From assembly GCA_020536535.1 (NCBI GenBank), contig JAHLWZ010000792.1, positions 62,001 through 126,000 of the forward strand: a stretch of 64,000 nt of DNA, written 5' to 3'. The DNA comes from Pelomyxa schiedti (Eukaryota; Protista; Evosea). The notes beneath the pieces were generated by a model, which saw only the letters and a list, made by a program, of their open reading frames with translations, did no database searches and was not told the origin of the DNA. Positions 17,618-32,684 of this stretch are shown here, piece after piece (the first letter of the stretch is position 1; each line of letters starts with the position of its first letter). A program made the translations under genes and the position numbers.

Positions 17618-18759
17618 TTATTTATCCATGGGCAATGTGGTTGGGAAGCCAAGTTCCGTCATCAGGCCTTGGAATCCTGTCATGAAGGAAACAAGGAATT
17701 GCTGTACAACTTGACTGGGCACAAAATCGTCCAGTGAGGTGGCATCCAGGTCCAATATTTTCTGAGCCGGGTTTAATTCATGGTAGAGAAAAGAGAGGAA
17801 CGAAAATGGGGAACAAACCTGTTCTTCAGCAGATTGTTGCAGTAAGTCAAAGAATCTTTGGAAGTCAAGTCCAAGCATTGTTCGAATATCAAGGAGATTG
17901 AAGAGGTCCTGGAGTGTGTCCCGGTGGAAGAAAATGGTGTCGGGTTGGTCTGATTGGTTGTTGGTTTTTTTCACTTTATCAGGCTTTGTTAAGTGGGAGA
18001 TGTGATATACCAGCCCATGTTGCTGTTGACATATTTTCCGATACAAGGTTCATTATCCAGGCAACAACGGCATCTATTCCGTTTGGCTTGTTCATCTGCT
18101 CTCTGGTTAAGAAATTGCCGGTTCAATGAGACACACATCATTCCACATCTTTAAAGTACAAAATGTCTGAAATTTCCTTGTTGCGTGCATTGGTTTCTCT
18201 GCAGTTCTCCAGTCTACATGCATTTGCGCAAATTCTAGTGCATCTGGCTGAGTTATCTTCCCCTATACAATGCAAAGCAAAGAAGAATGTAAGATGCCAA
18301 AAATGACATGAAACATGGGGACAGTACTGTTTTATTTTTGTCAAGAAAGTACAATGTGCCCACGTGGCGGAAATCAATCGGGTATTCCCTCGGTACACTA
18401 TCTTGTATTTCCAGTATCTAAACAATAACAAATTTAAAAAAAAGAAAAAAAAAATTGAACAATAACCCAAATTCAACAAACGAAATAAAGACAGAAGCAA
18501 CGACGCACGCACGCACTCTCGCTCTCACCTCGTGCAACACCACGTAGTCCCTGTTTGGCATGGGCCCAGGGGAGTACACCATCGACACCTCCGACCGCGC
18601 CGTGCTCCGTGCCGTGCTGCGCGCCGTGCTGCGGCTCGTGTTGCTTCGTCCGGTGGCCATGCTCGTGCCCGGCCGCGTGCTCAGCGCGTTGGCCGCCGTC
18701 TGCGTGTACATCGTGAACTGCGACGTGACGAACGTGATGTTGGATGCTGCTGTTCCCAT
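17618..18759 (-). CDS. Hypothetical protein, possible N-myristoylation (MGTAAS) and EF-hand-like C-terminus
   Basis: Exons MGTAASN...VVLHE|ILEIQDSVPREYPIDF... and QDLFNLLDIRTMLGLDFQRFFDLLQ. Middle exons unresolved. Confidence 0.4.
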
Positions 18760-19400
18760 GGTATTGTTACGTTGGTCCAACACCAAACAAGTTACTCTTC
18801 CCGTACTCCCTGATCAAGAATCTGTTTCGAATTAAGTTTTTCGGGCGATGAGACACTGGTCTTCCGCCGCGGAGTTTTGCCAATCATACTGCATTCAACG
18901 TGTCTTCCTCTTTTTATGGAATGACGTGGCTTCAAAACACAACAATGCACATAACATTGGGGAAATTGTACATCTGCTACAAAAAATACTTGGAAATGTC
19001 TTTAGGGAGGTGGAATGTACTGTCGCGGTTTTGAAGCACCTGCCAGTTGAGCCTTTCAAAGCAGAGTAGATGAAATGGTTGCCCTCACTCAGTATCTCAG
19101 AGGTAAAAGAAGTCCTATCACCGGGGAACTTCACCAAAGAAGACATTAGAGATGTAAATCTCTCTCGAGAGTACATGCTTTTATCAGCATTGAGATTATA
19201 AAAGGGTTCCCAGAGATAACAGCTACAATGTTCAAGGAGTGAGAAGTTCATGCACATGGCTATTGTAACACCCGGGCACATTGAGTTCACCATGAGGACC
19301 TGGGCCTGTCTTGTAGTGACTTTGCTGGGCCAGAGAAATGGCGGCACAGGCCAAAGCATGGTGGGGTTAAGAATTATTTTTGTTTTTACTGACGTAACAA

Positions 19401-22425: not shown

Positions 22426-23816
22426 TTAGCTTTTCAGTGGTACTTGATATAAAAATGACCCACACTTAATTTTTATCATGGACACATTTTGTCTGATGGG
22501 TGCATCATATGTATCAGTGAAAAGGTCCGTTGGGCAATTCAATAGTGAGTCTCCTAGTGCCCAGGCAACACTGACATGAGGTTGTGGGTTCTGAAGAAAA
22601 AATAAGCTGCGGAAATACAAAGCAAAAGTACCTGGTAGAAAACTGGTAGTCCAAAATCTGTCATCACTTGATCAACAGTTGCAATGAGAGATAGAATCTT
22701 GAGAATCTAGTTAGATTGGACCTAGGAGAATTGACATTTCAAATGAAAGAGGGAATAGGTAACCTTGTCAAGATTAAAAATGACTGGTAGGCATAAAAAA
22801 CAGCGAGATTTATCTTCATTTGGAAGGAAGTAAGGCTGTTGAGAGAACTCAGTAAAGAAGCTATTTGTGTTTTTATTCCCTTCATGTTAGTATTATTTCT
22901 CTGTACTACTGGAAAGTACCTGGAGTGTTTTGATAGGGCCGCATGAAGTGCATCAATTAGGGGTCGGATATGGAGGTGCCGCACTGCAAAGGCTTTGGAT
23001 AAACTGAGGTGCAAGTTCTCCGGTGGAGTGATATGAATTTTCCCATTTCCTCCAGTGTTCTTGGAAAAGACTTTAGCTTCAGCTATAACAGGTTTCTCCA
23101 CAACTGCTGCACTCGAAGTCGGTGTATCTGATGAGGGTAGGGGAATAGAATTTTCAGAGTGAAGTTTTTCGTGAAGCCACCCAGAGGCTTTCTGCACTAG
23201 TGGGGCGATATCTTTCTTTCCAATTGCAGTAACTGCTCTTTTGTTGGTTTCGTAAGTGGTTGGTCTAGGTAGGTTAACTTCCCCCTCTCTTTTTATAAAT
23301 CTTGTGCTTCATCCAAACGAAAAAAAGAAGAAGCCAAATGGCAATATAAGATAGTAGTGCTATATAAGGAAACTCGGAAAACACCAGCAACCAACCTTCA
23401 ATGAACACGTGAGAAGGGTAATTACCCTCTACGTGGGGGAAGGCCCTCTTCCTATTCTGGTGCAACGCGGGGTCGTCCACATGCTCCCCCTGCTGCTCCC
23501 GCCCACCCCCACCACCGCCTCCTGGTGCCCCGCTCCTCCCTCCCTCCTCCCCAAGCAACATGAACGACTCGGGCAGGGGAGGCGGGGCCGGCGGCGGCGC
23601 CGCCCGTCGCCTGGCCGATCCGGGGCCCTTGCTGGCCACAGGAATCGGAGACGGCAGCGACGTTGGTGTTGGTGTTGGTGTTGGTGTTGGTGTTGGTGTT
23701 GGTGTTGGTGTTGGTGTTGGTGTTGGTGTTGGTGTTGCTGTTGCTGTTGGTGTTGGTGTTGGTGTTGCTGTTGGTGTTGCTGTTGCTGTTGGTGTTGGTG
23801 TTGGTGTTGCTGTTGG

Positions 23817-23855
<39 letters not shown>

Positions 23856-23996
23856 GGGGAGGGGGGAGCTGGCAGGAAGGGCCGTGCGGGGGTGCTTGGG
23901 TGTGGGGCCCTGTGGTGGCTCCTCGTTCACATCGAGTCGCGTGTGGTCCTGCTCCTCCTCGTCCCCGCTGTCACCGTAAGCTGCGAGCTGGTCCAT
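22426..23996 (-). CDS. USB1: U6 snRNA phosphodiesterase (2H family)
   Basis: MDQLAAYGDS start, RAFPHVEGNYPSHVF, two HxS motifs (LHLSLS, PHVSVAW), C-terminal KCGSFLYQVPL. Confidence 0.92.
23661..23855. repeat. (GGTGTT)/(GCTGTT) coding microsatellite (Thr-Pro/Thr-Ala)
   Basis: Mixed hexamer array within the first USB1 exon. It generates the spurious long plus-strand ORFs. Confidence 0.95.
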
Positions 23997-24181
23997 CCAA
24001 ACGAGTCAGTTGGGTGGATTTCCCTAACCCTAACCCCTGCTATTCCTTCCCAGTTCCACAGACTTGCACCCAGGGAGCTGTATGCGGATGTGGGCCGAGT
24101 GCCGGCGTTCCTGGGGACTCTCTCTGACTGGAAAACCGGTTGAGTGGAGGAGAAAGATTTGCCCTTTGGAAACCGAAAAGA

Positions 24182-25465
24182 ATGCGGTTGGGGTTCCTTG
24201 TGTACTCGCTCACCGGCAACACGCGGCACGTGGCCGAGATGGTGGCGGCGGGGCTGGCCTCCCGCGGCCTCGTGGTCCAGCCCGAGGTAGTCTTCGTCGA
24301 CTGCGTGGAGGTCCAGCGCACCTGCTGCAGCACCGGCGCGGCCGACGACGACGGCGGGGCCGGCGCCCGCCTGGCCGCGGCGGTCTCTGGGTGCGACGTA
24401 GTGGGGCTGGGGTGCCCCTCGTGGGCCTGGCGCGAGTCGCCGCAGTTCTCGCAGCTGCTGCGGCGCATGCCCCCGGGGTGCCTGCGGGGCAAGCACGCGT
24501 TCGTGTTCACGACCAAGGGGGCCACGCAGGTGGTGGCCCACGCCGTCCTGGCCCAGCTCGCGAGGCGGCACCTGGGGGCGAGGGTGGTGGCTCAGTTCTC
24601 GGTGCTGTCTGTATCGAACTTTGCTCCTGCTTGCCCTGCTCTACCTCTCACTCAGAGGTTTGTTTGGTTTTTGTTTGTTTGTTTGTTTGTTTTAAATATA
24701 CATTTCTTATTTGTGTTGGATATTTTGTCTTTATTGGGGTTATGTACGTGGTGGTTTGCGTGGTGTTATTTTTTTTTCGGGAAAATAACTTGAACTTAGG
24801 TGGAACAGGAGGCATCTGGAAGCACGTGTGGGTGAGGCTGTGGAGAAGTTGGTTCCGGTTCTAACGAACCCGGCATCCCTTCCGGAGATATTCCCTGATG
24901 ACACACTTGATGCTGAAATCGCAGAAAGGGTTGCCGTAATCACCAAGGTCATGCCATTTATGACTGATGTTCTTAATGATTCGGTGAGTATTACTCCTTG
25001 CGTTTCCACTCACTAATGAGGAAAAAAGTTTGTTCTTTCAGGAACCGCCAAGGGAATGGGACCATTGGCAGCTGATCAATCCCTATGCATCAAGTGCGGA
25101 AAATGTATCCGGGCCTGCCCGAATCATGCTATCCAACCTGGGCCAGATGGTTTTCCAGGTGAGCTTCTTCCCCTTCCCCCCTTTTCTATTGCAACACAAT
25201 TGGCTCACACAATACAGTTTACAGCGTGGAAAAGTGCGTTGGGTGCTCACTATGCTTCCAAGTGTGCCCAAAGAAGGCGTGGTACTCTCCAGCCATCAAG
25301 AACAACAGCCAGTGGGTCTTCTCGGAAGACAAGCTGAGGGGCGATGTGGAGGACCTCACGCTGGGCCGCGTTGTAATCGACTCCACGACCAACGCAGTGG
25401 TACCGGACCCAATGGCTGACAAGCTCAAAATGTTCTTTGACACCATGGGAAAGTGGAACGACTAG
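24182..25465 (+). CDS. Flavodoxin + 2x[4Fe-4S] ferredoxin fusion (EFR1-like)
   Basis: FMN P-loop YSLTGNTRHVA and GLGCPSW. CIKCGKCIRACP and CVGCSLCFQVCP motifs. Three GT-AG introns. Confidence 0.9.
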
Positions 25466-27604: not shown

Positions 27605-30571
27605 ATGCGAACGGCGGCGTGGCGGGTGGCCGTTGCTGTTGCGGCCCTGCTGTTTGTGGCCTGCTGCCTCGCGCTCCCGCCCAAGGGTGCCGGCGGTGCC
27701 CCCGGCTACACCCACGAGGCCCCAGGCCTGGCGGCTGGGGGCAAGCAGCAGCAGGCGGGAGGGGTGGAGCACCGGCAGCGGGCTCTTATGGAGCAGAGGA
27801 GGCAGCAGCGGCTGGGGGCCCGGCTTGGCGGGAAACCGCGTGAGGCCGGGGAGGGCCTGGTGACTGGGACGCCCAGGGGAAGGAGCGGGTTGATGGATAC
27901 GAGGGATGCGTCAAATTTGAGCGCCGTGTGCATTGGTATGTTTGAATTTCCCTTCTTGTTCTTTCTGTATTGTCGTTTACCTTTTTTTTTTTTTTTTTTT
28001 TTTTTTTTGTACCGTTTTGCTCTTATGAGCACTAATTAATTTTCATGGTGGCTAATTTAGACCCTACTACTGGAGATTACCCCCCTGTGGGCTCGTGTTC
28101 AACGATTTATGATGCCGTGCCTGCTATAATTGAAATTGGTGTATACTTTACTGGTACTTCTTCTATCGGGTTTGGTTTGATTTTAACCAGCTTCTTCCCA
28201 AGAAATTAGCAATATTGACAGTTTTAGTAACACTTTCCAAGCTCAAGGGTATTTTGTAGGTGTATTACACAGTTCTCAAACTTTTTCGTAAGGTACTGTT
28301 GGTTCAAATGGCACACATGCCAGGTGATTGGTGATGTTTTATATAGGTAAGTAATTACATTCTTATTGCATCGTGACCTTGTTTTCTGTTTGTATCCAGA
28401 CCAGACCAAACTATGGTCATGGAAAATACAGCTGAGGTTGTATCTGATCCCATTCCTGAAGTGGGTTGTCCTGATGACCCTGATGTTGGTTGCGCTTTAT
28501 GTGACATTCCTAGAGCGGGTAATTTACTTGCCACAAAGAAATTAAATTCCTAAAAGTTCTCAGGGTGGTCGTACTATAACTTCAAGTTTAATAATCAGGT
28601 TTATTTTCACCTTGCACTGGCACATTTTTACACCTCTGGGTTTCTAGTTTTTTATGAAATTCGGATACAATCACTATCCCCTTGATTCACAATCATTATT
28701 TGTATCTTTCGAGGACATCTATTATTCTGCTGACAGTGTTCAAATTAAATTTGATGTAAGCAGTGCAATATCAAATAGTATGTCTGCCCCAGGATACAAG
28801 GTATAGATTTTGGACCTGTATCTGGCAATGCCTACAACCTTTTCAAAACAAAAAAAAGGTCAGCTCCTCAACTTGGAATAATACGTATAACAATGAGATG
28901 CTAACTGATTATGGACTTGGGGAAAGTAACGCAGTTTACTCCCACTGCAACATTGGACTGAAATTAGAGCGTAACAGTGCCTTCTTTATCTTGAAGGTAA
29001 TAATATATAGTCACCAATAATAGTACTATATTGTAGTGGTTAAAATGCAGATAGACCCCAATGCAAACAGAAAATGTAGATCCTTCCCCCTGCCGCTATC
29101 ACACTAGGAGTTTCCATCATTGTAACTTTCCTTGATCCACTTGAAATACAAGGGAGATTGGGTGTTGCTGTCAGTGGATTACTCTCTATGGTTTTCTTGT
29201 CTACCGGCACAGGTAAAGAAAACGAATGTACCCTTGTTCTCACAAACACTCCAATAGCTTCAAAAATTCCCGACATTGGGCAGGTGTGAATTTCTATCCC
29301 ATTTTAGTGCCACACACCAATTCCATGACGAAACCAGGTCACGATAGCAGATTGGGTCTACAACTGGTACTTCTTCATGCTACTCCTGATTGTAATTGAA
29401 ACCATCACTGTTCACAGGCATGTGTGCAGCAATCCCAATTCAGATACACTAACCTAACAAAAAACCAAAACAAAACAAACAAACACACAGATGGCTGCGT
29501 CGGTTCGGTAATGTTCTGCTCTTCAAAGCACTGGAAGAAGCCGTTTCGACCAAGAAGCCCGAGGCCTCCAGCACCCCCGCGATCCCCGCGTCGCCCAGGA
29601 TCCCCACGAGCCCCCTGGCCACCTCCACCTCCACCTCCACCTCGACCCCAAACCCCAGCCCCTCCGCGTCGCCCGCGCCCGCGCCCTCGCCCTCCCTCCC
29701 CTTCAACCTGCTCCTGAACCCCGCCGCCGGCACCAACGCGGGGGCAGGCAGCCGGAGCAGCACCCCCACGCCCCCAATTACGACGCCCCTCACTGCCCCC
29801 GGCCCCGCCGACTCCCCGGCGCCCCACAGGCACCGCCATCACCACCACAAGCACCGCTCCTCTGACGCTGCTGATGACAAGGACAGCGACAGCAACGACG
29901 GCGGCGGCGGCGTAGGGAGCAAAACCAAGAACAAGAAGAAGGACAAGGACAAGGACAAGGACAACAAGCCAACACTGCCCGAATCCGACCCCTCAGGAGA
30001 TGACAACGACTCTGACAAGAACAGCACCCCACGCTCGTCGTCGTCAACAACAACGACAACAGTGGTGGATTCTCCTACTGCCTCTGCTCACAGAAGCACA
30101 AACACCAGCCCCCCCTCCACGACGGCCACCACATCGCCGCACAGCCCATTGTCTCAAGCACCATCAGTGAACCCACTGCGGTCGTCGTTTGGGTTCGGCC
30201 TTGGGCTCAAGAATTCCAGCCCGCTGCGCACATCGTCGTCGCCACTCACCGCGTCGTCTGTGACACCTACGCTGAGATCTGCTCGTTCTGCGATTTCGAC
30301 CCACATCAGCGAACTGGCAAAGAGCGGCGTCACAAAGTTTGCTGGGAAAGCCAAGGTAGTCTCTATTTCCTATCTTATGAACTGAGACAGAGAGGTGCCC
30401 AACGTCTCGTACTAAACCAACACAAAGGGTTTGGATGTTACGGATGCAAATGAAATGTTCCAAAAACGATTGATGAAAGCAAAGCTGTTTGACAAAGCCA
30501 CAGCACTTTTTATATCTGTTATTGCTGTGCTGGGCACTATCTTTATTTCACTTCTTGGGAAGTATGGCTGA
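27605..30571 (+). CDS. Pentameric ligand-gated ion channel (Cys-less Pro-loop receptor) with long M3-M4 loop
   Basis: Signal peptide. IEIGVYF..ISNIDSFSNTFQAQGYCWFKW. Pro-loop HYPLDSQSL. Pre-M1 KLERNSAFFILKILPP. M2 RLGVAVSGLLSMVFL. M3 IPDIGQVTIADWVYNWYFFMLLLIVIE. M4 AKLFDKATALFISVIAVLGTIFISLL. Confidence 0.85.
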
Positions 30572-30733
30572 AAAAGTTTGAGAAACCTTTTGGTGTTGTA
30601 TAAAAAGATGACAAATTTCTGTTCATATCTTAGCTGCTCTGTGGTGGGTAATAATCTGAAAGTGTGGATTAATATTAAATCCCCAAAGTGTATGTTGAAC
30701 CTCCATCACTGCCGGAGTCTGCTACGGGCAAAG

Positions 30734-32684
30734 TTAGAACAATTTAAAACGGCAAATTTTGTAACCTTTCAGTGGTCTTGTTAGGTCACTGTGGTCACCG
30801 TGTCGGTCATTAATGCTGTCTTCAACAACATCCAGTCGGAACTGGGAAAGAAATCAGTAGATTAAAGGAAGAAGAAATTGAAACCTGGTTAAGTTTCCGT
30901 TTCAACAGAGGCACATTTTTCTTATCTTGTGACAATGGTAAGTTTCATTTTCAAAGTGTGTGACAATACCAGTTAAAACGCAAGTTGTCTGAGTCTTTGC
31001 CAGCTGGATGATAGCGTGGTTCGGGAAAACCTGAAAAGGGTGAGGCGGGAAAAAATTTAAAACATGACAACCGTTGTGGCAAGTATGTCGACGATTGTGG
31101 TTGCAAAGACCATCAACCCAAAGCCACCAATAAACTGGAAAGAGAAGTTGGAATGAGCGGGATATTTAAGGTATGAAGGTACAGTGAGCAGTAAAACGGC
31201 AAAGTCAAATTCACACAAGGTACCAACTTGGAAGGCCTAATGTAACTTAGTCCTTTTAGTTAGTCAGACAAGAGGAGTTGTACCACAATATGAATGGCAT
31301 GCCTTTTTTTTTTTTGTTATTTGTTGCTTTTGTGGAATGGAGTAAGATATACCTTTCTTGAAGATATCGTTGACTTCTGTCAGAGTTGTATTGTATTTCA
31401 TTCGATTTGTACTTTGTTTGGGGGAGAAGAGCTGCTGACATAGTATACCTTCCTTTACGTTAGTTTTCCCCTTATCGGCCCACAGTGAGATGATGAAAGA
31501 TACTTTATGTTATTCAAATTGAATGAGTATTTGTTGGAGTATGTGATTGTGAGGTAGATAACGATTCCGGAATCTCTCATACTATCACCACTGCCGAGGA
31601 CAGGGGCTAAAATCAGGAATACTATTTTAGAAGCAAGAAAAGTAGAATCAAAATAGAGTACAATGGTCATCAAGACTGTTATAACCACAAGCCTTCAAGA
31701 CAGTCTGGACCTCCAGTGTATCCCACAGCCCAGTTTGCCCAATACAATTTGGGTAAGCAGTAAGGTTCATCTCGTCTCCATTGGAATCGAGCATTTCGCC
31801 AAACAACTTGTGAGTGTGTTATGAAGTTAATGAGCAAATTTTTTGCTGTACAAATCGCCCATTTGAAGCAATCCCCACATGAGAGGCAAAGAAACTGTGA
31901 TCGATTCTGATCTACTAGTGTGTCACATAGTGGGCTAGAATCTCAGAAGGAAACCTGAAAGTGTTCGAGATCAGCAATATATTGCGATGTCTGGTTGGAA
32001 ATGGTTTCAAATTGGCACCCATTTTCAGTGCGGTCACAGGAGGGAAGAGCCTATGAAGCATTTAAAAGTAAGATTGCCTAGAGTGCACACACTTGATACT
32101 CAGCATCAGTTCTTGAAGTAACAGTAATGGAATCATCTTCAGTTGTTGGGAACCTATAGTCCAATTAAAGACTCTGTTTAGTTGCACATTCTTACCTGAC
32201 TTCATTTTCATCCCAGTAGATACAAGGATATTTGGTGAAGTTTTCTAGTGGTAAGGTACTTTGAGAGCAATATGCTAAATCTTCTGCATCCATGTATGAT
32301 TCAGGCTTAAAAGGGAACAAAGTAAATTGAAAGGTACAAAAATAAGAAAGCAAATACTGACTGGGTCTAACTGGAATCGAACAGTACCGTCCGGATCCTC
32401 GACGTATAAATAGTTTTTGTTCCACAATATCGTCACCAAACCTATGTAAAGCTGCCAGACAAAGCGCTATCAGCAACAGCGCAAGGACAAAAACCAAAAA
32501 CAAAGAAAAACAGAAAAAAAAAAAATCATGAAAAACGTACCACAATGACAGTGCACACAAACCAGTGGATTGAAGCCAACCGCCAATCCTTAATTTTGAC
32601 CACTTGGACAGTGCTGTAGCACGAAAGTGCATTCTTGACGCCATCAAAGGCGGTGTGGAACAAACCCGAGGCTGTGGACCCCAT
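30734..32684 (-). CDS. P2X receptor, Dictyostelium-type
   Basis: YSTVQVVKIKDWRLASIHWF..LYIGLVTILWNKNYLYVEDPDGTVRF, LAYCSQ..CIYWDE, RHAIHIV, FQVGTLCEFDFAVLLLT, TM2 FIGGFGLMVFATTIVDILAT. 3' end approximate. Confidence 0.87.

What the first reader, a model, noticed from the sequence alone, without database searches (positions are those of the whole stretch)
27605..30571. Pentameric ligand-gated ion channel in an amoeba: prokaryote-like loop, animal-like intracellular domain
Seen: Pro-loop YPLDSQ without the flanking Cys pair, M1 proline, M2 R0' and L9' with neither the E-1' cation nor the P-A-R anion filter (Q-G-R instead), and a roughly 300-aa low-complexity M3-M4 loop. Known: GLIC/ELIC are Cys-less but have minimal M3-M4 loops. 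Long loops are typical of animal receptors, and protist pLGICs are sporadic and mostly uncharacterised. Inference: a chemosensory channel with unknown ligand and selectivity.
Basis: partly seen in the sequence, partly recalled or inferred. Interest (0 to 1): 0.75.

Follow-up and report, generated by a model that had tools for sequence, protein, structure and literature searches.

The report
Cys-less pentameric channel gene in Pelomyxa
This is a real 13-exon gene of the anaerobic amoeba Pelomyxa schiedti for a cysteine-less relative of nicotinic/GABA-type receptor channels; it belongs to a small amoebozoan branch of a family known in protists since 2016, and its very long intracellular loop is a floppy, lineage-specific insertion.

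Summary
Observation confirmed. Window 27605-30571 (+) holds a 13-exon gene that encodes exactly GenBank KAH3758029.1 (Pelo_10159, "hypothetical protein", Pelomyxa schiedti, 738 aa).

- A clade profile hits 282 PDB pLGIC sequences, best E 1.9e-23.
- The AlphaFold core model matches GLIC/ELIC at Z 16.6.
- YPLD, pre-M1 Arg, M1 Pro, R0', L9' and the M2-M3 Pro are all present.
- The Cys-loop cysteines are replaced by Met229 and Leu243.
- The filter reads Q-G-R.

It belongs to a small clade seen only in Pelomyxa, Balamuthia and a few environmental contigs. The clade carries its own Cys-rich ectodomain insert.

"Animal-like intracellular domain" is only superficially right. The 315-residue M3-M4 span is a GC-rich, Ser/Pro/Thr-rich disordered expansion. 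Relatives have 72-149 residues there. Only the helices after M3 and before M4 are conserved.

Ligand, selectivity and cellular location remain untested. The transmembrane domain is most like anion channels.

The scan already reported this kind of gene on other DNA of the same genome (s1-383175, s1-386726). Verdict: new member of a known kind, moderate interest.

The parts
27605..27935 (+). Exon 1 (residues 1-111): putative signal peptide (1-24, window 27605-27676), then a Gly/Ala/Arg/Gln-rich low-complexity extension. GC 0.71, GC3 0.80.
   Evidence: pLDDT below 50 for 23-58 and 73-107
28061..28153 (+). Exon 2 (residues 111-142): start of the ectodomain, first beta strand (VPAIIEIGVYFT), clade-conserved C123.
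28203..28248 (+). Exon 3 (residues 142-157): ISNIDSFSNTFQAQG, second beta strand.
28293..28346 (+). Exon 4 (residues 157-175): YCWFKWHTCQ motif with clade-invariant C166.
28400..28518 (+). Exon 5 (residues 175-215): clade-specific Cys-rich insert C198 ... C206-x-x-C209 (window 28467-28502). The insert is absent from the prokaryote-like relatives P0009 and P0010.
   Evidence: low pLDDT in both models
28564..28598 (+). Exon 6, a 35-nt micro-exon (residues 215-226, GWSYYNFKFNNQ).
28648..28800 (+). Exon 7 (residues 227-277): Cys-less Pro-loop. M229 and L243 stand in place of the two cysteines. YPLDSQ at window 28675-28692. FEDIYY (loop B region).
28859..28996 (+). Exon 8 (residues 278-323): last ectodomain strands, loop C region TDYGLG...VYSH, pre-M1 R315 (window 28970-28972), start of M1.
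29080..29212 (+). Exon 9 (residues 324-368): M1 with P327, M1-M2 linker DPLEIQGR (E-4', Q-2', G-1', R0' at window 29149-29157), M2 with L9' (window 29182-29184).
29258..29283 (+). Exon 10, a 26-nt micro-exon (residues 368-376): M2-M3 linker ASKIPDIGQ with the conserved P372 at 23'.
   Evidence: The exhaustive search hit stopped at query residue 46, showing that the 45-nt stretch before this exon is spliced out.
29338..29417 (+). Exon 11 (residues 377-403): M3. It ends at the gene's only GC-AG intron.
   Evidence: The HRW junction is kept in relatives from a transcript or intron-poor contigs. 1.59% of P. schiedti introns are GC-AG (PMC8887013).
29491..30355 (+). Exon 12 (residues 403-691): intracellular loop. 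A helix runs on from M3 to about residue 422. It is followed by about 250 disordered Ser/Pro/Thr/Ala-rich residues with a His run and a Lys/Asp run. GC 0.64, GC3 0.76.
30428..30571 (+). Exon 13 (residues 692-738 plus stop): basic amphipathic pre-M4 helix (MA-like, F.KRLMKAK..DK) continuous with M4.
   Evidence: helix 695-737, pLDDT 58-73

Best explanation
The gene is an intact nuclear gene of Pelomyxa schiedti (Pelo_10159). [quoted passage not shown]

Shown:
- an exact 13-exon model
- superfamily membership by sequence profile and by predicted fold
- every residue of the conserved ectodomain-to-pore coupling core
- membership of a small clade found in Pelomyxa, Balamuthia and a few environmental eukaryote contigs

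Inferred mechanism:
- A signal peptide places the beta-sandwich domain outside the cell or in an organelle lumen.
- Five subunits assemble, and a small ligand or protons bind between ectodomains. The conserved FED (loop B) and TDFG...YS (loop C) motifs suggest one shared agonist class across the clade, possibly an amine or amino acid.
- The signal passes through the YPLD tip, the D239-R315 salt bridge and the M2-M3 proline, and opens a pore gated by the L9' ring.
- Selectivity cannot be read off Q-G-R. I lean to anion-preferring or weakly selective. The M1-M3 region aligns without gaps to GABA-A alpha1, the best transmembrane matches are all anion channels, -1' is Gly and there is no acidic ring at -1' or 20'.
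- The 315-residue intracellular span is a recent disordered expansion, likely a regulatory or phosphorylation tether. It sits between two conserved helices and is not an animal-type domain.
For: - Exact mapping of P0001 on the window.
- Identity as KAH3758029.1 on a 217-kb P. schiedti contig among eukaryotic genes.
- phmmer against the PDB: 235 pLGIC sequences, best 1.6e-9, aligned over residues 127-407.
- Clade profile against the PDB: 282 sequences, all shown being pLGICs, best 1.9e-23.
- Full-length AF2 model with strands in 132-315 and helices 317-340, 343-368, 379-422 and 695-737.
- Core model pLDDT 71 and pTM 0.64.
- Foldseek top 500 significant, every listed row a pLGIC, E about 1e-14.
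- VIA Z 16.6 to GLIC/ELIC, with 214-252 residues aligned and rmsd 3.1-3.6 A over about 215 residues.
- Invariant Y/P/D, R315, P327, E345, R349, L358 and P372 across six clade members.
- Loop lengths 72-149 residues in relatives against 315 here.
- Nine introns shared in position and phase with the paralog Pelo_12482.
- Loop exon open in one frame only.
- The conserved-residue list and the statement that Cys-less protist receptors exist are from PMC4795631.
Against:
- P0001 alone is below Pfam's gathering cut-offs for both domains.
- The models are monomers of moderate confidence. The Cys-rich insert and the M2-M3 linker have low pLDDT.
- Pentamer formation, ligand, gating and selectivity are all untested.
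- An invariant E-4', and E at -2' in some relatives (as in GLIC, from memory), would fit cation selectivity instead.
- PMC4795631 states that this position does not predict selectivity in protist sequences.
Confidence: 0.8

Rival explanations
1. It has the same fold but is cation-selective and proton- or amine-gated like GLIC/ELIC. That would make it a depolarising sensor, not an anion channel.
For: The ectodomain aligns over its full length with GLIC and ELIC ectodomains. E-4' is invariant, and E occupies -2' in P0004 and in the L002 ORF. The nearest non-clade relative, P0009, is prokaryote-like with a short M3-M4 linker (hhalign 99.5%, E 1.7e-22).
Against: This gene has Q at -2', G at -1' and no acidic residue at 19' or 20'. 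The best transmembrane matches are GABA-A, GlyR, GluCl and a pH-gated chloride channel; nicotinic receptors score far lower. The M1-M2 linker aligns without gaps to GABA-A alpha1.
Confidence: 0.3
2. It works on an internal membrane (phagosome, endolysosome or vacuole), with the 'ectodomain' facing the lumen and sensing luminal pH or metabolites. It would then not be a surface chemosensor.
For: Only topology is established (signal peptide plus four TM helices), and that fits either membrane. From my own knowledge, Dictyostelium P2X receptors are intracellular, on the contractile vacuole. The tail-to-tail neighbour here is a P2X-like gene (faint PF00864). The large Ser/Thr/Pro-rich cytosolic loop could carry sorting signals.
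Against: There is no localisation evidence of any kind. No sorting motif was tested. The adjacency to the P2X-like gene may be chance.
Confidence: 0.35
3. The giant loop is partly an annotation artefact: exon 12 contains unrecognised introns or is alternatively spliced. The real protein would then have a loop of about 70-150 residues like its relatives.
For: Relatives have 72-149 residues in this span. Exon 12 has a composition unlike the conserved exons (GC3 0.76 against 0.29-0.50). No transcript was seen for this gene.
Against: Only one of six frames is open over all 865 nt, and only 12 of 5000 shuffles are open. The published annotation was refined with transcript data using PASA and EVM (PMC8887013). 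GC-rich islands occur elsewhere in the window, so this composition is a habit of the genome.
Confidence: 0.12
4. The clade entered Amoebozoa by an old transfer of a bacterial Pro-loop receptor, rather than descending from the eukaryotic Cys-less lineage.
For: Closest outside the clade are short-loop, prokaryote-like sequences that share the LPDIG M2-M3 motif (P0009, P0010). No intron position is shared between the Pelomyxa and Balamuthia genes, as expected if the ancestral gene had no introns. Jaiteh et al. list no Amoebozoa.
Against: The source organisms of P0009 and P0010 are unknown. A scan of 185,579 prokaryotic genomes with the clade motifs found nothing. Language-model features place the core nearest eukaryotic clusters from rotifers, molluscs and diatoms (a lead only). 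Intron turnover alone could explain. No phylogeny could be built here.
Confidence: 0.3

Closest known systems
Cys-less Pro-loop receptors of unicellular eukaryotes (Jaiteh, Taly & Henin 2016, PMC4795631)
   Same: A Cys-less beta6-beta7 loop with [F/Y]PxD. The full conserved core is present (pre-M1 Arg, M1 Pro, M2-M3 Pro, basic 0', Leu 9'). The M3-M4 region is variable. Biological role and selectivity are unknown.
   Different: That inventory names stramenopiles, green algae, opisthokonts and alveolates, and the word Amoebozoa does not occur in its text. This clade also has its own conserved cysteines (C166, C198, C206-x-x-C209). This member has an unusually long disordered loop and N-terminal extension.
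GLIC and ELIC (bacterial pLGICs)
   Same: Best structural matches, at Z 16.4-16.6. The ectodomain aligns over its full length. There are no Cys-loop cysteines.
   Different: From my own knowledge, GLIC and ELIC have M3-M4 linkers of a few residues and no introns. Here the span is 315 residues, with helices prolonging M3 and M4. The gene also has a signal peptide plus an 80-residue extension and 12 spliceosomal introns. The charge filter differs.
Anionic Cys-loop receptors (GABA-A alpha, GlyR, GluCl)
   Same: Best-scoring transmembrane matches. The M1-M2-M3 alignment to GABA-A alpha1 has no gaps and places Q-G-R on P-A-R. Arg at 0', a small residue at -1', Ser/Thr at 6' and Leu at 9'.
   Different: No Cys-loop disulfide. 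No Pro at -2'. The ectodomain is only weakly similar. The intracellular loop is unrelated low-complexity sequence.
Clade relatives: Pelo_12482 (P0005), Pelomyxa sp. JSP transcript (P0004), Balamuthia mandrillaris QOT17_006708 and QOT17_015759 (P0007, P0008), and environmental contigs (P0002/L003, L002, P0003)
   Same: 27-59% identity over the whole alignment. Same motifs and same cysteines. Nine introns are shared with Pelo_12482.
   Different: These relatives have 72-149 residues between M3 and M4 and shorter N-termini. Several carry acidic residues at -2', 19' or 20' that this gene lacks. The Balamuthia genes have four or five introns, all at other positions.

Membership tests
Pro-loop receptor / pLGIC superfamily | [F/Y]PxD at the tip of the beta6-beta7 loop, with the only absolutely conserved residue (Pro) | tested here: met
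   Y236-P237-L238-D239. P and D are invariant in all six clade members. Criterion from PMC4795631 Table 1.
Pro-loop receptor / pLGIC superfamily | Pre-M1 Arg (salt bridge to the loop Asp), M1 Pro kink, M2-M3 Pro | tested here: met
   R315, P327 and P372 (at 23'), all invariant in the clade.
Pro-loop receptor / pLGIC superfamily | Four TM helices, with M2 carrying a basic 0' and Leu 9' | tested here: met
   Hydropathy peaks and predicted helices at 317-340, 343-368, 379-422 and 695-737. R349 and L358 are invariant.
Pro-loop receptor / pLGIC superfamily | Beta-sandwich ectodomain on a helical bundle (fold) | tested here: met
   Predicted model only. Foldseek E about 1e-14, with every listed row a pLGIC. 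VIA Z 16.6 to GLIC/ELIC.
Pro-loop receptor / pLGIC superfamily | Significant sequence-profile match to known members | tested here: met
   phmmer 1.6e-9 and clade profile 1.9e-23 against solved pLGICs.
Pro-loop receptor / pLGIC superfamily | Pfam PF02931 and PF02932 above the gathering score | tested here: not met
   P0001 scores 12.5 against 26 bits and 16.0 against 28.1 bits. PF02932 is passed by P0002, P0004 and P0007 in the scan and is recorded for P0008 in the precomputed Pfam column. This is a sensitivity limit of the models on a divergent clade, not a missing feature.
Pro-loop receptor / pLGIC superfamily | Pentameric assembly and agonist-gated conductance | not testable with these tools
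   Only monomers could be predicted. There is no electrophysiology.
Metazoan-type Cys-loop receptors | Disulfide-forming Cys pair flanking the loop (Pro-8 and Pro+6) | tested here: not met
   M229 and L243. The clade has M/T at the first position; at the second it has L/I/V, with Cys in one member, P0007.
Anionic-type selectivity signature | P(-2') A(-1') R(0') | tested here: not met
   Q347-G348-R349 is aligned column for column on P-A-R of GABA-A alpha1.
Cationic-type selectivity signature | G(-2') E(-1') K/R(0') | tested here: not met
   There is no acidic residue at -1' in any clade member.
Animal-type intracellular domain | Structured MX and MA helices homologous to those of animal receptors | tested here: inconclusive
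   Helices prolong M3 (to about residue 422) and M4 (from 695), and a basic pre-M4 motif is conserved in the clade. No sequence similarity to animal intracellular domains appeared. The bulk of the loop is disordered and not conserved.

The most novel reading that the evidence does not exclude
The four clade-conserved ectodomain cysteines (C166, C198 and the C206-x-x-C209 pair) sit in an insert that prokaryote-like relatives lack. The insert lies in the stretch that I place, by motif spacing rather than by a structural alignment, at the loop A region beside the agonist pocket. These cysteines could form a metal (Cys4) or redox-switch site. Amoebozoan Pro-loop receptors would then be gated or tuned by redox state, sulfide or Zn/Fe in anoxic sediment. 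That would be a sensing mode not described for this superfamily. With the adjacent P2X-like gene, the locus would be a small ionotropic sensing unit.
Probability: 0.08. Interest if true: 0.7.

Novelty: new member of a known kind. Interest (0 to 1): 0.4.

Why it matters
No biological role is known for any pLGIC of a unicellular organism (PMC4795631). Amoebozoa were not in the published inventory.

This gene and its relatives extend the family to a further eukaryotic supergroup, including the pathogen Balamuthia. They are compact targets, for example the 393-residue Pelomyxa sp. transcript. Testing them could show what ligand-gated channels do in cells without synapses. It could also show how selectivity is set when neither canonical filter is present.

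The gene is also a clean example of GC-rich low-complexity expansions inflating the loop regions of a conserved membrane protein.

The gain is incremental. Cys-less protist receptors with variable loops have been known since 2016. The scan has already reported pLGIC genes elsewhere in this genome.

Tried and rejected
- Pfam on nine single exons by reference found nothing relevant (one search failed on a coordinate slip, which I corrected).
- phmmer of the Pro-loop exon and of the M1-M2 exon against the PDB gave nothing or chance hits.
- The word search with the full alignment was swamped by low-complexity words and returned only its own members.
- Trimmed alignments added only P0008, P0009 and P0010.
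- The scan of prokaryotic genomes with clade motifs found no relative.
- The metagenome scan found two contigs.
- Literature searches for amoebozoan pLGICs found none; the 'amoeba' hits are the AMOEBA force field.
- My own first exon model wrongly skipped the CWFKWHTCQ exon and read through the 45-nt intron. The database protein corrected it.
- A contaminant or bacterial origin of the locus is rejected: it has 12 spliceosomal introns and eukaryotic neighbours on a 217-kb contig.
- A phylogeny with animal, protist and bacterial receptors was not built, because no tool gave me those sequences by reference.
- Cysteine pairing could not be read, because model coordinates are not exposed.
The full-length queries used the database protein P0001, which a search returned. 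Exons were joined only inside a script, to check identity with P0001.
Full report
**What is there**

The region is AT-rich (33-47% GC) and is interrupted by two GC-rich blocks. By eye it reads as a multi-exon gene.

- Pfam found nothing on nine exon pieces.
- phmmer against the PDB found nothing on the Pro-loop exon, and only chance hits on the M1-M2 exon.

The exhaustive protein search with the M1-M2 open frame (window 29080-29286) returned a 738-residue protein, P0001. It is 96% identical over query residues 1-46, and the match stops exactly where a 45-nt intron begins. P0001 is GenBank KAH3758029.1, "hypothetical protein Pelo_10159 [Pelomyxa schiedti]". It lies on a 217-kb contig of assembly GCA_020536535.1.

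A script that walks the window and demands exact identity to P0001 gives one real solution:
- 13 exons and 12 introns of 44-125 nt.
- Eleven introns are GT-AG and one is GC-AG.
- Two exons are micro-exons of 35 and 26 nt.

The many extra "solutions" of a looser run are empty-exon artefacts after the last codon. The model fits the published genome statistics of 7.43 introns per gene and 1.59% GC-AG introns. That annotation was made with Augustus and refined with PASA and EVM using transcript data (PMC8887013).

No model joined by me was sent to any search tool. All full-length work used the database protein that a search returned.

**Is it a pentameric ligand-gated channel subunit?**

Yes, on four lines of evidence.

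1. Sequence. P0001 alone is under Pfam's cut-offs (PF02932 16.0 against 28.1 bits; PF02931 12.5 against 26 bits). phmmer against the PDB finds 235 sequences. All 60 shown are pLGICs. The best is an ELIC/GLIC-GABA-A chimera at 1.6e-9, aligned over residues 127-407. A profile of five clade members raises this to 1.9e-23, with 282 sequences matched and again only pLGICs among the 60 shown.

2. Fold. The full-length AlphaFold2 model is poor overall (pLDDT 48) because more than half the chain is disordered. It still shows a strand-rich domain at 132-315 and helices at 317-340, 343-368, 379-422 and 695-737. The core alone (residues 108-425, nine-sequence alignment) reaches pLDDT 71 and pTM 0.64.
   - Foldseek gives at least 500 significant hits, every listed row a pLGIC, at E about 1e-14.
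   - VIA-align gives Z 16.6 to GLIC and ELIC. It aligns 214-252 residues, with rmsd 3.1-3.6 A over about 215 of them.

3. Conserved core. Table 1 of Jaiteh et al. 2016 (PMC4795631) lists the conserved residues of the superfamily. Nearly all are present here and invariant in the clade:
   - Y236-P237-x-D239
   - pre-M1 R315
   - M1 P327
   - M2-M3 P372, exactly at 23'
   - R349 at 0'
   - L358 at 9'
   - The beta9 tryptophan is not clearly conserved.

4. Topology. There is an N-terminal hydrophobic segment that is a probable signal peptide, plus four hydrophobic helices.

All are confirmed:
- The two Cys-loop positions are M229 and L243.
- The pre-M2 triplet is Q-G-R. It lies column for column on P-A-R of GABA-A alpha1 in a gap-free alignment from M1 to M3.
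- 315 residues lie between the invariant E397 in M3 and D713 before M4.

**The loop is not animal-like in any deeper sense**

- The five closest relatives have 72-149 residues in the same span.
- About 250 residues are modelled as disordered, with pLDDT around 30.
- A 300-residue stretch (404-703) contains 54 Ser, 37 Pro, 36 Thr and 29 Ala. By eye it also has a His run and a Lys/Asp run.
- The loop exon and exon 1 (an 80-residue Gly/Ala/Arg/Gln-rich extension after the signal peptide) have GC3 of 0.76 and 0.80. The conserved exons have 0.29-0.50.
- Similar GC-rich islands occur elsewhere in the window.

These are therefore lineage-specific low-complexity expansions of a kind common in this genome.

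The loop exon is probably coding. Only one of six frames is open, and only 12 of 5000 shuffles are open.

What the clade does share is a helix running on from M3 (HRWLRRFGNVLLFKALEE) and a basic helix continuous with M4 (F.KRL.KAK..DK). GLIC and ELIC lack these (my own knowledge).

**Relatives**

The clade is small in very large databases:
- a paralog in the same genome (Pelo_12482, P0005)
- a transcript of Pelomyxa sp. JSP from EukProt (P0004, 393 aa)
- two genes of Balamuthia mandrillaris (P0007, P0008)
- two metagenome contigs (L002; L003 = P0002)
- an exon-sized ORF present twice on one ENA metagenome contig (P0003)

All members share four ectodomain cysteines: C166 in W.TC, C198, and C206-x-x-C209. 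The last three lie in an insert that the nearest outside sequences lack.

Those outside sequences have short loops and look prokaryotic. P0009 matches at hhalign 99.5%, E 1.7e-22. P0010 carries PF02931 and PF02932. Their organisms are unknown.

A motif scan of 185,579 prokaryotic genomes found nothing. Language-model features place the core nearest eukaryotic pLGIC clusters from rotifers, molluscs and diatoms (a lead only).

Intron positions:
- P0001 and P0005 share nine introns in position and phase. The duplication is therefore old relative to intron gain within Pelomyxa.
- None of the Balamuthia introns coincides with a Pelomyxa intron.
- This fits an intron-poor ancestor, possibly a transferred bacterial gene. 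It also fits plain intron turnover.

I could not build the phylogeny that would decide this.

**Mechanism**

Shown: an intact coupling core and a pore with a Leu 9' ring.

Inferred: pentamer formation, agonist or proton binding between ectodomains, and gating through the Pro-loop, pre-M1 and M2-M3 interface.

The conserved FED (loop B region) and TDFG...YS (loop C region) motifs suggest that clade members bind one agonist class.

I lean to anion-preferring or weakly selective for these reasons:
- The best transmembrane matches are GABA-A, GlyR, GluCl and a pH-gated chloride channel.
- The alignment to GABA-A alpha1 has no gaps.
- -1' is Gly, and nothing acidic sits at -1', 19' or 20' in this member.

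Against this lean:
- E-4' is invariant, and relatives carry E at -2'.
- Jaiteh et al. warn that this site does not predict selectivity in protists.

Location is open. A luminal-facing organellar channel is as compatible with the topology as a surface chemosensor. The tail-to-tail neighbour is a P2X-like gene. From my own knowledge, P2X receptors of Dictyostelium are intracellular.

**Novelty**

The text of the 2016 inventory does not mention Amoebozoa. My literature searches found no amoebozoan pLGIC. The gene is annotated only as hypothetical.

Cys-less protist receptors with variable loops are, however, a known kind. This scan has already reported a paralog with the same reading (s1-383175) and a SAM-capped pLGIC pair (s1-386726) in this genome.

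Verdict: new member of a known kind, moderate interest.

**Not done**

- The reads tools could not be used, so expression of this gene is unverified.
- No pentamer prediction.
- No phylogeny.
- No inspection of cysteine geometry.

Noticed in passing
window 30630-32684 (-): The tail-to-tail neighbour is a 421-residue gene with a faint PF00864 (P2X receptor) hit. Its 3' end lies 58 nt from the stop codon of the pLGIC gene, so two ligand-gated channel families sit side by side (also noted as s1-386915).
   Followed up: partly
window 27605-27935 and 29491-30355 compared with the other exons: There is strong compositional heterogeneity within the gene. The two low-complexity exons have GC3 of 0.80 and 0.76. 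The conserved exons have 0.29-0.50. I have no explanation beyond 'GC-rich repeat expansion'.
   Followed up: partly
window 18501-18800, 23401-24600: Further islands of 63-78% GC lie in a 45% GC window. They may be the same kind of low-complexity coding expansion in other genes.
   Followed up: no
window 27982-28008: A run of 27 T sits inside intron 1.
   Followed up: no
L010 1501-3515 and L011 1501-3702 (Balamuthia mandrillaris GCA_031835245.2): The pathogenic amoeba Balamuthia has two genes of this clade, both annotated as hypothetical. They have four and five introns. Four intron positions are shared between the two genes, and none is shared with Pelomyxa.
   Followed up: partly
L004 4001-4267 and L005 2254-2520 (ENA ERZ21831265 ctg76858c): An identical 88-residue ORF covering M1-M2 of this clade occurs twice, about 22 kb apart, on one 35-kb metagenome contig. 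The same small neighbouring ORFs flank both copies. This is a duplicated pLGIC locus in an unidentified AT-rich eukaryote.
   Followed up: no
L002 10-927 and 997-1533: A metagenome relative is split into two ORFs exactly at the M2-M3 linker. That is where the Pelomyxa genes have introns, so this may be a retained or single intron in an otherwise intron-free copy.
   Followed up: no
L009 (P. schiedti JAHLWZ010000846.1): The paralog Pelo_12482 lies next to a 947-residue arrestin-N/arrestin-C/C2 protein gene on the opposite strand.
   Followed up: no
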